Source: Selaginella moellendorffii
Taxonomy: Eukaryota; Plantae; Lycopodiophyta
NCBI RefSeq assembly: GCF_000143415.4
Contig: NW_003314302.1
Span: forward strand, 1,339,752-1,403,751
Direction: 5' to 3'
DNA length: 64,000 bases
Under the pieces are notes generated by a model. That model saw only the letters and a program-made list of their open reading frames with translations. It did no database searches and was not told the DNA's origin. Made by a program: the position numbers and the translations under genes. Below are positions 19,269 to 24,660 of the stretch, one piece after another. Each line of letters opens with the position of its first letter. Position 1 is the first letter of the stretch.

Positions 19269-22115
19269 ATGCTGGCATTGCTGCTCCTTCTCGTGCCGCT
19301 AGGGCTCAGCGGCAAATCGACACGGCCATCCGCCGGCGAAATTTCGGAGAATCCAGTCGCGGCGGATCTAACGCTTGCACAGGCGCCCAAATTTTCGGAT
19401 TCTTCACTGTAAGTGAGCGATCGAAGGTCGTGGCCGCTGCCTAATCGATGTTCTTGCGCACTGTAGAGGTTTCAGGCTCACGCCAGATGGTACTGTGCAC
19501 GCGATCGATGACACTGGCAAGTATTTCTGGTCTTTTTCGTCTGGAGGGAGCTCGCTCGTGGAGATTGAGCCGATTGAGCAGTATGCCGACGAGGCGGAGC
19601 ATTTCGACCAGGTATCTTAGGTTCTTAGCCGATACGCGTTTTTAGGGACGTGAATTCTCTTGCAATCCTTTCTCGTTTTTTCTTTCAAGTCTTGATAGAA
19701 GAGTTTCCTCCCAGCACTGTCGAGCTCTTGTAGAATTTGCATTGCCAAGCCTTGTTTTTTTACTTATTTGTGGTTCTGGAGCTCACACTTTTTATTCTTC
19801 ACAGGATTACGAGACTTTAAAGAAGTACATTGCTGAGAGCCCGATCGTGAGCGAGGGTGGCGTGGTGATAGGGGCGTCTTTGAAATCAGTGTTCGTGGTC
19901 GACCCCAGCACCGGGACTCTGATCCACAAGTTTGACATCAACGGAACAACGTCTGGGAAGGATGCGGAGCCGCTGCTATCCTCGATGCTCAAGGACTTTA
20001 AGCCCCTCTTCNNNNNNNNNNNNNNNNNNNNNNNNNNNNNNNNNNNNNNNNNNNNNNNNNNNNNNNNNNNNNNNNNNNNNNNNNNNNNNNNNNNNNNNNN
20101 NNNNNNNNNNNNNNNNNNNNNNNNNNNNNNNNNNNNNNNNNNNNCCAGCTTGACTTTGCTTGTCTCTGATGGAAAGCCATCCAAGCGCAAGTTTCAAGGC
20201 ACGAAATTCACACCGATTATCGTGGAGCCACCGTATTACCTCGACTACCTTGTCAAGAACCACACCTTACCTCCAGTCTCGGCTCCTTCAAATGCGATTC
20301 TGGCACTTCCTAGCGGATCCAATCCCAGAAACAGCACCAACAGCGGCAGGGGAAGCTTTCCAGTTGGGTGGCTTTTCGGTGCACTGCTTGCATGTCTGGC
20401 TGTGGTAACTCTGGTGCTGAAAGGAGTGCTACACTTTGGACAGAAAGAAAAGCAGAAGAAGGAAAAGGAGCAGCAGCAAAAGCGGAAGAAACGCAGAGGT
20501 CCGAAGGGTGATCGAGCCTCTCAAGAAAACGTTAGTAAACAGGTGGATGATGCGAAAGTGGATCAACCGAAAAAGCAGGATGCAGATGGAAGAATTGGGA
20601 GCTTGACGATCTCTAAGATAGTCATCGGTTACGGAAGCCATGGCACCAGGATTCTCGAAGGCAAGCTGGATCAGAGGCAGGTAGCTGTGAAGTCGATACT
20701 TAGCGGCTTTTACCACAAAGCCTCGAAGGAAATAGCTGCTCTCATCGAGCTGGATACTCATCCAAATGTGGTGCGGTACTACTCAATGGAGCAGGACAAC
20801 GACTTCGTCTATATAGCTCTGGAGAGATGCAGCTTTAACCTGGAAACATTTATTCTCGTGCACGCTGCTGGCGCAGACAATCGAACTGAAGTAAACGAGT
20901 TCGAGGAGAAAGAACTCCAGGAAATTTTGCAGCAAAAGCTCACCTTGTGGGATAGGTCCTGCCTTCCAAGCCCGTTGCTCATGAGACTGATGAGGTAGTT
21001 TTCTTGTTGCTGGCTCACGTACTATTTTCTTGTTCGCTTTTCATTACAGAGATGTTTTGGAAGGACTCGTTCATCTTCACAAGCTCGGCTATGTTCATCG
21101 AGACTTGAAGCCTCAAAACGTCTTGATTCTTCGGAGTGGCACTTTTCTGAGCGCAAAAATATCCGATATGGGAATCAGTAAGCGGTTGAATGATGGAGCG
21201 TCAGGCATTGACAAGCTTACTACTGGTACGATTCTATTTGCCAAAAACAAAAGAAAGAGAAAGATTTTACGTACGTTTAAACAGGTATGGGCAGTTCCGG
21301 CTGGCAAGCACCCGAACAAATCCAGGGCGAGCGGCAAACTCGAGCTGTGGATATGTTCAGCGTTGGTTGCCTACTTTACTTCTGCATCACTGGCGGACAG
21401 CATCCATTTGGAGGCCGACTGGAGCGTGACATGAACATTGTGTCTGGTAAAATGGATCTCTTTGCTGTAGATCACTATCCAGAAGCTATCGACATCATTT
21501 CAAGTTTGCTTGCCATGGATCCCAAAGACAGGTACAGCACAATCTTTGGATATATTTCTGATCTTAATCCTTTCTGTTTTACACAGACCAACTTCTATGC
21601 AAGTAAAGCTTCATCCATTTTTCTGGCCCCCGCAACAGCGCTTGCAGTTTCTCATCACTGCTAGCGATCGTGTCGAACGCGAGGATAGAGAAGCCAGCTC
21701 GGCGGTACTGACTGCGCTGGAGGCCGTGGCTCCGACTGCGTTGGGCGGCGCATGGGATGAGAAGCTGGACCCTTTACTCATCAACAACCTCGGCCGCTAC
21801 AGGCAATATAACTATCAGGCCGTGCGGGATTTACTCAGGGTCATTCGTAACAAGGCGAACCATTACAGGGAGCTTCCTGCCGATGTACAGGTAACTCTTT
21901 TCTCCCAAGGTTTACTTCTCTTCTTCTACCGAAGTGCTGAGTTCTTTTTGGTTTCTTTTCAGCAAATACTAGGAAGCATTCCTCAAGGCTACGAGAGCTA
22001 CTTCCGGACTAGATTTCCGAAGCTCCTCATGGAAGTTTACAAAGTTATAGCAGACCACTGTTGGGAGGAGGAAATGTTCCAACCGTATTTCTCCGAGGCC
22101 GACGACTACTTATGA
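19269..22115 (+). CDS. IRE1: IRE1 ER-stress kinase/endoribonuclease; multi-exon, spans an assembly gap
   Basis: Signal peptide MLALLLLLVPLG; luminal motifs (DGTVHAIDDTGKYFWSFSSG, SPIVSEGGVVIG..VFVVDPSTG); TM then basic stretch; kinase IGYGSHGT, HPNVVRYY, HRDLKPQN, KISDMG, GSSGWQAPE; KEN domain VRDLLRVIRNKANHYRELP...YFRTRFPKLLMEVY. Confidence 0.93.
20012..20144. other. Assembly gap (133 N)
   Basis: Run of N within the IRE1 luminal region. Confidence 1.
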
Positions 22116-22439
22116 TACACTCCATTATTATCGGTGTCAGCGAAAGACCACTCGCAGCAGCTCGAGCGCTCTGGGCCTTTAAGATTCGTGCGCTTGCAGA
22201 TAATTCTTTGTCTTGTTTCAACCAGCGCCTGCGAGACAAAGACAAACAAGGTATGGCTCTCTTCCCCTTTATAATCGTTTCGTGGTTTCTTCAAAATATC
22301 TAACGCTTGCTCCTTTTCTCAGGTCTCTTCTTCTCTCCCGTTTTTTAGCTTCTCGAGCTTCTACATTGGTTTCTTCGAAAAGTTTGTAAGTGATTCCATT
22401 CCTTTGGTTTTAAAGTTCTCTCCCAGCATCACGCGAGCA

Positions 22440-23338
22440 ATGCCACCGTCCTCGATCATCCGCCAGGCACTGGAAGCTCTGGCCAGTGGCAAATGCGTCG
22501 CCATTCTCGACTCGGAGCCTCGCCGGGCGCGCTCCGTACGCTCCGTACGCAGGCCGGGGGCGAGCTCTACATCGCCATCGGCAGCGAGGTGGCCACGACG
22601 TTCGGGTTGCCGTACATGGGTCAGGTGCTGGCCATGGCCCATTCCCACCCCGTGCTGCAGTGCAGTGCCAAAGGTACGGCAATGTGCCAGGGCTCATGCT
22701 CGGTTGGAATCTCTTTGGACCACAGGAGCCTCAAGACTGGGGCGTCCGACGTGGAGAGGAGCTACACGTGTCGCCGCCTGGCTGGCCTGTGGCGCGAGCA
22801 CAGCTGTGCCTCCAATGGCAATGGTGGTATTGTCAAGCCTCTTACAAGTGCCCAAGAGGCATTTGGGAGAGAATTTCATGCTCCAGGCCATATTTTTCTC
22901 TGTGTGGAGTGCAAAAGCAGCAGGGATCTCTCCTCTCATGGTAAGCTTTTTCTCTCTATTATTTTTCCTGACTGTTGTAATCATCTGTTAGCTTTGTATG
23001 ATTCTTTTTGCTCTGATTGATATTCCTGTGCTTTCTATGATATTAAGATGCTAACTTGCATGTTTTCTCTCAAGCTTTTCTCTTTTTCTTTCCTTTTTCC
23101 TTTTTTCTTTGACCGTTTTAATTCTGTTAGCTTTGTATGATTCTTTTTCCTCTGATTGATATTCCTGTAATTTCTAGATGCTAACTGATCCTTCTAGGTT
23201 GGCTGTGTGATGCTGTGTAATGAGGGTGATGACTTTGGAGCCCTTCCACCTCAGGATGCCAGATTCTGGGCTGAAAAGCACCAAGTACCATTCTTAGCAG
23301 GCCAAGAGATATTTGATTTCACCAATGGCTTAGCTTGA
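22440..23338 (+). pseudogene. ribB: Stand-alone archaeal-type 3,4-dihydroxy-2-butanone-4-phosphate synthase (RibB)-like gene with two compensating frameshift deletions; 2 exons
   Basis: Blocks in order: IRQALEALASGKCVAILDSE / SPGALRTLRTQAGGELYIAIGSEVATTFGLPYMGQVL / SVGISLDHRSLKTGASDVERSYTCRRLAGL / FGREFHAPGHIFL / AKAAGISPLM|VGCVMLCNEGDDFGALPPQDARFWAEKHQVPFLAGQEI. These are colinear with archaeal RibB as I recall it. Intron 22941-23197; stop 23336-23338. Confidence 0.8.
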
Positions 23339-23399
23339 TTGGAAAGCTGGAAGATAAGTTTCATGAATCTCTAAAGTGGAGAGGTGTTTGCATTTCATT

Positions 23400-24660
23400 C
23401 ATTCATTCGTTAGCTGGGTTTTGCGGTGCCCACCAAGAAGCATGAGACTGACGGATTATAGTAAACCGTTTTGATGATCTTGTGATGCCTCTCCCATCCC
23501 ATGTTTGAAATTCCACTTGTCAACCATTACCCCAACCTTCACGAAAATCCGCATCTCGCCCGTCCTATAATCCCCGCTAATGCTAATGTTGTGTGAAATT
23601 TCACATGATCCATCATTTCTAAAATTCTATTTCTATTTTGAAAAAGATTTTCTCATGGGAACCAACGCACGGTCAGGCAAGTTTTAAATGGTGGAAACGC
23701 ATATTCGCGTTCCATTCATAAATACAAGATGCTCGGAGAAGAGAAGAGAAGAAGCGCTTCTGATCATCTCCATCAATGGTAGTACCTATCGCATTTTTAT
23801 AGCCCATGTGGTTGCCTTCAATAGGCGTGTCCTTGGCGTACGGACGGAGAGAAACTTTTGGCTCCGTGCCGCTAACAAGAAAGAACCTCTGCGAGAGAAT
23901 ATAAGATAAGATACCCACGTTTAGTACCTGGATCTTCCCGGAGCGTGGTTTAGATTGGAACCTTTAGCAAGGACACGGCCCTTCTCGATATTTTCTTCCC
24001 TGGCTCCATCTCGATCTGCAAAGCTTAATCCATGGATATGGCTGGCCAGGCCTGCGAGTAACAATGAGAGTTTGTTAGCCAAATATCAAGGAAATAGATT
24101 TTCTATCGCCCATGGTTTGTCACATGTGGATTCCAACAGACAACGAATAAAACAGCTAAAGACACATTCCCTTCACACTCTCATTGTCCCGACACTATCA
24201 CTGGAAAAGGAGAGGATAGACAAATTTTTCTTCCTTTTTCTATCAGCAGAGGCACTGGATGGATGGTTACTAGCTGGTAGTCTATACTGACGAGCGCACA
24301 AGGAACAAATGGAAAGAAACAAACGCACCTATAGACCAAAGCAAAGGAACTCTCTGCTCTAGGTAGACACCTGCGTCTAAGTGAATCGATTCACAGTACC
24401 TGAAAGAACCAAGTTGCTCTGGCTTTGGACCAGTCGAAGAACATATTTTGATCAGCTGGGATCACGCTCTGGGGTCTGACAAAACAGTGGAAGAATCATG
24501 TCAAGGAGAAGAACATTGTCAGAGTACCTGGATCAGACAGCATTCACGTTGCCTAGAACTCTGTAATGCGGCTCTGCCAAGAAAAGAGAGAAACAAAGCA
24601 AAAGGAAAAGTTAGCCAGGAAGAAAGGAGCTTGCTTTGGGGAAATTCGGTGCCATTGATG
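23400..24660 (-). pseudogene. Probable degenerate multi-exon gene of unknown family
   Basis: Series of GT..AG intron-like segments with pyrimidine tracts separating exon-like blocks on the minus strand (e.g. ~23788-23888, ~23928-24051); no continuous frame or recognisable domain found. Confidence 0.3.

What the first reader, a model, noticed from the sequence alone, without database searches (positions are those of the whole stretch)
22440..23338. Stand-alone archaeal-type RibB homologue in a land-plant genome (HGT candidate)
Plants normally encode DHBP synthase as part of plastid-targeted bifunctional RIBA. This gene is monofunctional in size, has no transit peptide, and has one spliceosomal intron inside a host gene island, so it is not contamination. 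It carries features I recall from Methanocaldococcus-type RibB: the GLPYMGQVL..HPVL insert (cf. GIPFMVDIL..FKVL), DHRSLKTG (cf. NHRKTFTG), FGREFHAPGH (cf. FGKEFRSPGH) and WAEKHQVPFLAGQEI (cf. YAEKHNLIYLSGEEI). The conserved GLIC and CEM positions read GELY and CVM, hinting at altered function even before the deletions.
Basis: partly seen in the sequence, partly recalled or inferred. Interest (0 to 1): 0.8.

Follow-up and report, generated by a model that had tools for sequence, protein, structure and literature searches.

The report
Broken allele of known archaeal-type RibB gene
This is a transcribed but disabled copy of a Selaginella gene for an archaeal-type RibB-like protein; the family occurs throughout green algae and seedless land plants and was published in 2012 as an ancient transfer from archaea, so the core claim is correct but not new.

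Summary
Window 22440-23338 encodes a stand-alone PF00926 (DHBP synthase) homologue of the archaeal type, with no transit peptide and one coding intron that RNA-like contigs splice out. It lies next to an IRE1-like gene.

It is a disabled copy of Selaginella moellendorffii LOC9657162 (XP_024538363.1, 245 aa, about 98% identical). A 43-nt deletion removes the REGETD loop and a 53-nt deletion removes RxGHTE. Each shifts the frame; together (96 nt) they restore it. Both the deleted and the intact form occur in RNA-like contigs. The intact form is linked to the same upstream gene, so this is most likely a null allele.

The family is not a land-plant novelty. It occurs in mosses, a liverwort, Selaginella, zygnematophytes and many chlorophytes. 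That clade (100/100) is sister to Poseidoniales (marine group II) RibB (99/91). Yue et al. 2012 (PMC3493653) already list ribB as the one archaeal (euryarchaeote) acquisition in Physcomitrella.

Possibly new: every eukaryotic member has Val where all sampled archaeal sequences and E. coli RibB have Glu (M. jannaschii position 185), plus GGELY and an MCQGxCSVG loop. This suggests a re-wired or changed activity. The scan noted this same stretch once before (s1-433323).

The parts
21960..22115 (+). End of the upstream IRE1-like gene (last coding stretch, stop at 22113-22115). This is context: RNA-like contigs run from here into the RibB-like exon.
   Evidence: Ribonuc_2-5A and Pkinase hits. Contigs of 2.9-3.1 kb cover 21960-22248 joined to 22321-22942.
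22249..22320 (+). 72-nt GT..AG intron between the IRE1-like stop codon and the RibB-like ATG. It is either a 5'UTR intron of the RibB-like gene or a 3'UTR intron of the IRE1-like gene.
   Evidence: Joint 22248->22321 in all 4 runs.
22440..22517 (+). Codons 1-26 (MPPSS...ILDSE), identical to the intact protein P0124.
22517..22518 (+). Junction of deletion 1. 43 nt are missing (S27-T40 plus 1 nt), which removes the invariant R28, E29, E31 and D33 of the REGETD metal-binding loop and shifts the frame.
   Evidence: tblastn against P0124. An X12 contig continues after 22517 with 30 letters that encode SREGETDLFF.
22518..22909 (+). Middle coding remnant, matching residues 41/42-171 of P0124 at 97.7% identity. 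It is out of frame relative to the ATG. It holds GGELY, MCQGSCSVG, DHR and EFHAPGH.
22909..22910 (+). Junction of deletion 2. 53 nt are missing (N172-A188 plus 2 nt), which removes R179, G181, H182, T183 and E184 (the RxGHTE metal/phosphate motif). The frame returns to that of the ATG.
   Evidence: Contigs with extra letters between 22909 and 22910 occur in X4, X10 and X12.
22911..22940 (+). Codons for AKAAGISPLM (residues 190-199 of P0124), the end of exon 1.
22941..23197 (+). 257-nt GT..AG intron, phase 0. It contains a direct duplication (22984-23056 and 23123-23186).
   Evidence: Spliced joint in 4 runs, with intron-retaining contigs also present. Repeat found.
23198..23338 (+). Exon 2 coding part (VGCVML...NGLA, then stop), matching residues 200-245 of P0124 at 97.8% identity. 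Val stands where archaeal RibB has the catalytic Glu.
23339..23677 (+). 3'UTR. RNA-like contigs end between 23548 and 23677.
   Evidence: table 8.

Best explanation
The window holds a transcribed loss-of-function version of the Selaginella moellendorffii gene LOC9657162. It is most likely the second haplotype's allele. The gene belongs to a RibB-like family found throughout green algae and seedless land plants, and that family descends from one ancient transfer of an archaeal ribB. The closest living relatives of the donor gene are in Poseidoniales (marine group II).

Shown: two deletions (43 and 53 nt) cut out the two motifs that carry the metal and phosphate ligands. They put about 130 codons out of frame. 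The mRNA is still made and spliced, and because 43+53=96 and the shifted frame has no stop codon, it keeps a 213-codon open frame.

Inferred: the product cannot fold or act as a RibB-type protein. Any function in this plant comes from the intact copy. The intact family protein keeps the Mg2+ and sugar-phosphate binding residues but has a re-wired active site (Glu185 to Val, Cys55 to Tyr, Leu53 to Glu, and a new Cys-x-Gly-x-Cys loop, in M. jannaschii numbering). It therefore probably acts on a sugar phosphate with altered chemistry or specificity, alongside the canonical plastid RIBA enzymes.
For: Identity to the intact gene: pieces are 97.7-100% identical to P0124 (XP_024538363.1), and there is no second copy in the window.

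Deletions: they remove 9 of the conserved columns of A3 (7 of its 15 invariant ones plus 2 nearly invariant).

Both forms in RNA-like contigs: the deleted form has 0 mismatches in X1, X4 and X10. The intact form is seen as the SREGETDLFF-coding extension at 22517 in X12 and as extra letters at 22909|22910 in X4, X10 and X12. The X12 contig that carries the intact form also covers the IRE1-like exon and the 72-nt intron, with only 4 differences in 486 nt.

Splicing of both introns.

Family distribution.

Archaeal type.

All 80 best loci among one genome each of 185,579 GTDB prokaryotic species are Poseidoniales or MGII-like MAGs (four carry bacterial bin names), at 41-45% identity.

Tree: eukaryotes 100/100, Poseidoniales 100/98, the two together 99/91, Selaginella among streptophytes.

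Motif dichotomy: Val in every eukaryotic row that is complete at that position, Glu in about 80 archaeal rows and in E. coli RibB.

Published HGT: PMC3493653.

Canonical RIBA genes exist in Selaginella: PMC3509567.
Against: Allelic status is inferred from short contigs, not from a phased assembly; a very recent segmental duplicate that includes the IRE1-like gene would look the same. X1 shows only the deleted form, though contigs drop rare variants. The organism names of the runs are coded and the window's species is inferred from about 98% protein identity. No activity data exist for any member of the green clade, so 'altered chemistry' rests on sequence alone. The role of Glu185 is taken from memory of the M. 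jannaschii and Magnaporthe structural papers, which were not held. The archaeal sample in the tree came from the best hits to the moss protein, and the only outgroup is one long E. coli branch.
Confidence: 0.8

Rival explanations
1. The copy is a paralogous pseudogene, a recent duplicate of LOC9657162 elsewhere in the haploid genome, rather than an allele.
For: Two forms coexist in single runs. There are four amino-acid differences besides the deletions. No annotated protein corresponds to the window's open frame.
Against: The contig carrying the intact form shares the same upstream IRE1-like exon and 72-nt intron, with under 1% difference. A duplicate would therefore have to include the neighbouring gene. 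From background knowledge, the published S. moellendorffii assembly is known to contain both haplotypes. The window has an N gap typical of a draft scaffold.
Confidence: 0.12
2. The gene was recently transferred horizontally into a land plant (lycophyte or embryophyte level), which is the implication of the finding's title.
For: It is of archaeal type and has no seed-plant homologue (PMC3493653 lists 'No' for an Arabidopsis locus).
Against: Orthologues with the same derived motifs occur in chlorophytes, prasinophyte-like algae and zygnematophytes. The eukaryotes form one clade with a long stem, and Selaginella sits among streptophytes.
Confidence: 0.03
3. The window copy is functional. Its 213-codon frame (RibB N- and C-termini around a novel out-of-frame middle) is translated and has a use, and the ORF-preserving pair of deletions is not a coincidence.
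For: The two deletions sum to 96 nt, and the shifted 131-codon frame has no stop, which happens in about 2% of codon shuffles. The transcript is abundant and spliced.
Against: The stop-free alternative frames are a property of the parental sequence, not something that evolved after the deletions. The out-of-frame product is Arg/Trp/Pro-rich, as expected for GC-rich frameshifted sequence, and matches no protein except through its in-frame ends. Both catalytic motifs and most of the fold are lost.
Confidence: 0.04
4. The deletions are assembly or sequencing artefacts and the locus is really intact.
For: The window is a draft-type scaffold with an N run. The intact form is present in the same runs.
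Against: Contigs from independent studies reproduce both deletion junctions with zero mismatches: X1 across both, X4 and X10 across the first, X12 across the second. 20 of 24 listed runs hold most of the stretch's 31-mers.
Confidence: 0.02

Closest known systems
[quoted passage not shown]
   Same: The same gene. The retained pieces are 97.7-100% identical, with the same intron position, the same N- and C-termini and the same neighbouring IRE1-like gene.
   Different: The window copy lacks 43 nt and 53 nt, which removes the REGETD and RxGHTE motifs and shifts the frame between them. It also carries four substitutions: T42S, V to A, G to R and L to P.
Physcomitrella/Physcomitrium ribB listed as acquired from Euryarchaeotes (Yue et al. 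2012, Nat Commun 3:1152, PMC3493653, Table 1 and Fig. S13)
   Same: Orthologous family. P0004 is 61% identical to the intact Selaginella protein, with the same derived motifs. The conclusion of archaeal origin is the same.
   Different: That paper files it under riboflavin biosynthesis and names the donor only as Euryarchaeotes. Here the sister group is specifically Poseidoniales, and the catalytic-site substitutions are pointed out.
Methanocaldococcus jannaschii RibB (PDB 1pvw, 1pvy, 1snn), the characterised archaeal DHBP synthase
   Same: The same fold: TM 0.85/0.94 and rmsd 1.8 A for the model of the intact protein. The score is 122 bits over the full length. It shares the archaeal-specific insert (HPVL.. 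in the plant, FKVL.. in M. jannaschii), and the REGETD, NHR/DHR, PGH and RxGHTE motifs.
   Different: In M. jannaschii numbering, the green clade has Glu185 to Val, Cys55 to Tyr/Phe, Leu53 to Glu, Arg143 to His, Asn106 to Asp, and the loop YDEKSSFS replaced by MCQGSCSV. It scores below both NCBIfam equivalog cut-offs.
Plant RIBA (bifunctional, plastid-targeted DHBPS/GTP cyclohydrolase II)
   Same: Both contain a PF00926 domain.
   Different: The window gene has no GTP cyclohydrolase II domain and no transit peptide, and its sequence and fold are of the archaeal rather than the bacterial type. Selaginella has RIBA genes of its own (PMC3509567).

Membership tests
DHBP synthase superfamily (Pfam PF00926) | Profile match above Pfam's gathering score | tested here: met
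   The window's middle piece scores 37.8 bits against a cut-off of 26.4. All homologues carry PF00926.
DHBP synthase superfamily (Pfam PF00926) | RibB alpha+beta fold | tested here: met
   For the intact allele P0124: pLDDT 93.9 and pTM 0.91. The top 47 PDB matches are all RibB structures. This does not apply to the window copy, whose middle third is out of frame.
Functional DHBP synthase (RibB equivalog, TIGR00506 / NF004437) | Score above NCBIfam's curated equivalog cut-off | tested here: not met
   P0001 scores 145.1 against 177.45 and 123.3 against 262; P0004 scores 144.3 and 127.7. The haloarchaeal P0098 passes TIGR00506 with 216.6.
Functional DHBP synthase (RibB equivalog, TIGR00506 / NF004437) | Metal ligands: Glu of the REGETD loop and His of GHTE (Glu39/His154 in V. 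cholerae RibB, PMC9305975) | tested here: not met
   Both are deleted in the window copy. They are present in the intact allele and in almost all orthologues.
Functional DHBP synthase (RibB equivalog, TIGR00506 / NF004437) | Active-site Glu of the C-E-M/L motif (M. jannaschii Glu185, E. coli Glu174; role recalled from the literature, not re-read) | tested here: not met
   Val in the window (23207-23209) and in every eukaryotic member that is complete at that position. Glu in about 80 archaeal sequences and in E. coli RibB.
Functional DHBP synthase (RibB equivalog, TIGR00506 / NF004437) | Conversion of ribulose 5-phosphate to DHBP and formate | not testable with these tools
Archaeal-type (as opposed to bacterial, fungal or plant-RIBA type) RibB | Closer in sequence, fold and tree position to archaeal than to bacterial or fungal RibB | tested here: met
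   122 bits against at most 54 bits. TM 0.85 against about 0.7. The clade is nested among archaeal rows and sister to Poseidoniales at 99/91. Plant RIBA itself could not be included.
Plant RIBA | Fused GTP cyclohydrolase II domain and plastid transit peptide | tested here: not met
   The 245-aa protein has PF00926 only. The alignment starts at residue 5-7 and ends at the C-terminus.
HGT-derived plant gene by the criteria of Yue et al. 2012 | Green-plant plus donor clade with at least 80% support, and homologues otherwise restricted to the donor group | tested here: met
   Eukaryote plus Poseidoniales clade at UFboot 99 / SH-aLRT 91. The nearest non-green relatives are all archaeal.

The most novel reading that the evidence does not exclude
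The RibB-like clade of the green lineage is not a DHBP synthase any more. After transfer from a Poseidoniales-like archaeon it evolved rapidly (stem of about 1 change per site). It then froze a new active site: Val for the catalytic Glu, a Glu two residues before the old Cys position, and a Cys-x-Gly-x-Cys loop over the substrate pocket. It now carries out a different Mg2+-dependent sugar-phosphate reaction that seed plants lost, and which Selaginella (null allele) and Sphagnum (degenerate copies) are in the course of losing.
Probability: 0.4. Interest if true: 0.55.

Novelty: already known. Interest (0 to 1): 0.27.

Why it matters
The headline claim, an archaeal ribB in a plant nuclear genome, is a published example of archaea-to-plant gene transfer, and the intact gene is annotated, so nothing changes there. 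Three smaller points may be useful.

1. The donor side can now be narrowed from 'Euryarchaeotes' to relatives of marine group II (Poseidoniales). From background knowledge these are planktonic archaea that live alongside marine phytoplankton. This fits an acquisition by an early marine green alga rather than during land colonisation.

2. The family's annotation as 'riboflavin biosynthesis' is doubtful, because a position that is Glu in every sampled archaeal RibB and in E. coli RibB is Val in all eukaryotic members. A simple assay could uncover a new activity.

3. The window shows a natural, expressed null allele in the reference Selaginella clone. That suggests the gene is dispensable, at least in heterozygotes.

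Tried and rejected
- The look-up of encoding contigs for P0001 found nothing on record. The intact allele's DNA could therefore not be aligned, and the exact deletion end-points and any microhomology remain inferred from the protein and from a 30-letter contig overhang.
The narrower A2 worked.
- The M. jannaschii mutagenesis and structure papers (PMID 12200440, 12904291) are not held. Recent RibB papers name only the metal ligands. The role of Glu185 therefore rests on memory plus its conservation here.
- The supplement of Yue et al. (Fig. S13) is not held.
- A search with the window's shifted open frame found no annotated protein other than the intact gene, through the shared ends.
- TRF missed the duplication in the intron; the repeat finder found it.
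- The big representative search was not used, since the word search and family scans settled the identity.
- Rejected readings: contamination (introns, splicing, IRE1-like neighbour); plant RIBA or fungal RIB3 affinity (scores, fold, tree); tiny introns as the cause of the two gaps (the window is genomic, and the missing stretch starts AGCC, not GT).

Full report
**What is in the window.**

Reading 22000-23800 and translating the pieces gives three stretches that belong to one protein:
- 22440-22517: MPPSS...ILDSE.
- 22518-22909, in another frame: ..PGALRTLRTQAGGELY...EFHAPGHIFLCVE.
- After a 257-nt intron, 23198-23338: VGCVML...NGLA, then stop.

The middle stretch matches Pfam DHBP_synthase above threshold (37.8 against 26.4 bits). 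It also matches TIGR00506 and the archaeal-type model NF004437. Against all PDB sequences, both the middle piece and the exon-2 piece find M. jannaschii RibB and no bacterial or fungal RibB.

**It is a damaged copy of a known gene.**

The word search with the middle piece returns SELMODRAFT_176418 of Selaginella moellendorffii at 90% identity. The same cluster holds the RefSeq model XP_024538363.1 (LOC9657162, 245 aa, P0124). tblastn of P0124 on the window gives:
- residues 1-26 at 22440-22517;
- residues 42-171 at 22520-22909 (97.7% identity);
- residues 200-245 at 23198-23335 (97.8% identity).

Residues 190-199 read at 22911-22940, and there is no further copy in the 64 kb.

Two gaps follow from this:
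- 43 nt are missing after 22517 (S27-T40 plus one base).
- 53 nt are missing after 22909 (N172-A188 plus two bases).

The first gap removes R28, E29, E31 and D33 of the REGETD loop. The second removes R179, G181, H182, T183 and E184. These are 9 of the conserved columns of a 62-sequence alignment: 7 of its 15 invariant ones plus 2 nearly invariant ones. They include the Glu and His that ligate the catalytic metal in RibB (Glu39/His154 of the V. cholerae enzyme, PMC9305975).

Each gap shifts the frame. Their sum is 96 nt, so the frame of the ATG is regained at 22911, and that frame happens to be open throughout (195-aa ORF). The result is a 213-codon frame whose central 131 codons are out-of-frame sequence. 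A search with it finds nothing except the intact gene, through the shared ends.

**Transcription, splicing and the second form.**

Twenty of 24 listed public runs hold most of the stretch's 31-mers. Contigs of four runs from four studies were laid on 21900-24100. They show the following.
- The coding intron is removed, with the joint at 22939/40 to 23197/98 and GT..AG ends, in all four runs. Intron-retaining contigs are also present.
- A further 72-nt GT..AG intron (22249-22320) is removed in all four runs.
- Contigs of 2.9-3.1 kb run from the IRE1-like gene's last exons straight into the RibB-like exon.
- The deleted form is reproduced with zero mismatches. X1 covers both junctions, X4 and X10 cover the first, and X12 covers the second.
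- The intact form is also present. In X12 a contig leaves the window at 22517 with AGCCGCGAGGGCGAGACCGACTTGTTCTTC, which encodes SREGETDLFF. In X4, X10 and X12, contigs carry extra letters between 22909 and 22910.

The X12 contig with the intact sequence also covers the IRE1-like exon and the 72-nt intron, with only four differences in 486 nt. The two forms therefore share their upstream neighbourhood at over 99% identity. That is what two haplotypes of one locus would look like. A recent segmental duplication is the alternative.

The spliced joints show that these runs contain RNA. The run records do not state this, and the organism names are coded. The window has an N run near 20000-20130, as in a draft scaffold.

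**Genomic setting.**

The upstream ORFs carry protein-kinase and Ribonuc_2-5A (KEN) domains, so the neighbour is an IRE1-like gene ending at 22115. The RibB-like protein starts at the first residues of the domain: residue 7 aligns to model position 5, and the alignment to 1pvw begins at residue 5. There is no room for a transit peptide. Contamination is excluded by the two spliced introns and the eukaryotic neighbour.

**The family.**

A search with the moss orthologue finds full-length relatives at 52-79% identity in these groups:
- mosses: Ceratodon, Sphagnum;
- a liverwort: Calypogeia;
- Selaginella;
- zygnematophytes: Mesotaenium, Closterium, Spirogloea;
- chlorophytes and prasinophyte-like algae: Scenedesmus, Chromochloris, Tetraselmis, Prasinocladus, Pseudoscourfieldia, a pedinophyte.

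No seed plant appears among the named hits, although NCBI nr and UniRef are in the database.

The next best hits, at 41-45% identity, are marine group II archaea (a Poseidonia MAG is named). Haloarchaea follow at 36-40%. A scan of one genome for each of 185,579 prokaryotic species gave 544 relatives. All of the best 80 are Poseidoniales or MGII-like MAGs; four of them carry bacterial bin names.

The moss protein scores 122 bits against M. jannaschii RibB and at most 54 bits against any bacterial or fungal RibB in the PDB. An AlphaFold model of the intact Selaginella protein (pLDDT 93.9) superposes on 1pvy with TM 0.85/0.94 and rmsd 1.8 A. For bacterial and fungal structures the values are about 0.7/0.8 and 3-5 A.

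**Tree.**

The tree used IQ-TREE with LG+C20+F+G4 (PMSF), 73 rows and 259 columns, with E. coli RibB as outgroup.
- All eukaryotic sequences form one clade: 100/100, with a stem of 1.07 changes per site.
- The Poseidoniales form one clade: 100/98.
- The two are sisters: 99/91. They sit inside the other archaeal sequences.
- Selaginella falls with the bryophytes and zygnematophytes.

Caveats apply. The bootstrap had not fully settled. The archaeal rows are the best hits to the moss protein rather than a balanced sample. The single outgroup is a very long branch. No plant RIBA sequence could be fetched for the tree.

This pattern fits one old acquisition in the green lineage, vertical descent and later losses. 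It does not fit a transfer into land plants.

**Prior publication.**

Yue et al. [quoted passage not shown] They state that only one of their 57 families came from archaea. The HGT interpretation is therefore already in the literature, and the intact Selaginella gene is annotated. Hiltunen et al. 2012 (PMC3509567) show that Selaginella also has two ordinary RIBA genes. The canonical route to DHBP is thus present independently.

**A point that may be new: the active site.**

In an alignment of all retrieved sequences, every eukaryotic member differs from every archaeal member and from E. coli RibB at the same places. In M. jannaschii numbering, derived:

| Archaeal RibB | Eukaryotic clade |
|---|---|
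| Glu185 | Val (GCVML; archaeal sequences have xCEML or GAEML) |
| Cys55 (Cys or Phe) | Tyr or Phe |
| Leu53 | Glu (GGELY against GGLIC or GGLLF) |
| Arg143 | His (EFH against EFR) |
| Asn106 | Asp (DHR against NHR) |
| substrate-covering loop YDxRSSFS | MCQGxCSVG |

The metal and phosphate motifs (REGETD, PGH, RxGHTE) are kept. The plant and algal proteins score below both NCBIfam equivalog cut-offs. From memory of the M. jannaschii and Magnaporthe structural work, Glu185/Glu174 is a proposed acid/base catalyst. I could not re-read those papers.

A long stem followed by strict conservation of the new residues across chlorophytes and streptophytes is the usual signature of a change of function under selection.

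My odds for the intact family protein:
- about 40-45%: a changed reaction or substrate;
- about 35%: still a DHBP synthase, with the acid relocated to the new Glu;
- the remainder: a non-catalytic role.

No functional study of the clade was found.

**Verdict.**

The archaeal-type assignment is confirmed. The 'HGT candidate in a land plant' reading is right about origin but wrong about timing, and it is not new. The copy in this window is a transcribed null version, most likely an allele, of an annotated gene.

Noticed in passing
window 21960-22942: RNA-like contigs of 2.9-3.1 kb in four runs join the last exons of the IRE1-like gene (stop at 22115) to the RibB-like exon 1, through a 72-nt intron (22249-22320) that lies between the two ORFs. 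Either the UTRs overlap, or the RibB-like ORF rides on the IRE1-like transcript's 3' end. Contigs cannot tell which.
   Followed up: partly
window 22523-22909: The 387-nt middle coding part is free of stop codons in all three forward frames. Codon shuffles give this in 2% (offset 1) and 0.2% (offset 2) of trials. This is why the double-deletion allele keeps an open frame. As a property of the parental gene it is unexplained.
   Followed up: partly
window 22984-23056 and 23123-23186: There is a direct duplication inside the coding intron, with 139-nt spacing and 94% identity over 54 nt.
   Followed up: yes
window about 20000-20130: A run of N (seen as X in the ORF translations) lies inside the IRE1-like gene. 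It is an assembly gap.
   Followed up: no
P0008, P0038, P0047, P0061 (Sphagnum magellanicum / S. balticum): Several Sphagnum copies have degraded motifs (KEAKSN or REAKTD for REGETD, NGHIE for GHTE, and truncations). The family seems to be decaying there too, or the gene models are poor.
   Followed up: no
P0059, P0065, P0066, P0068: There is a second eukaryotic subgroup with RGELY, MVQGKCSVG, DFR/DYR and GTVMV. One member is a 371-aa transcriptome protein with a long N-terminal extension. The subgroup is nested inside the green clade on a long branch, which may indicate secondary spread to another algal group. The organisms are not named.
   Followed up: no
P0001 versus P0124, window 22826-22855: The older JGI model SELMODRAFT_176418 lacks 10 residues (GIVKPLTSAQ) that RefSeq and the window retain. 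That stretch is a lower-confidence loop in the model (pLDDT about 73 for residues 141-150). It is probably a gene-model difference, not a real indel.
   Followed up: partly
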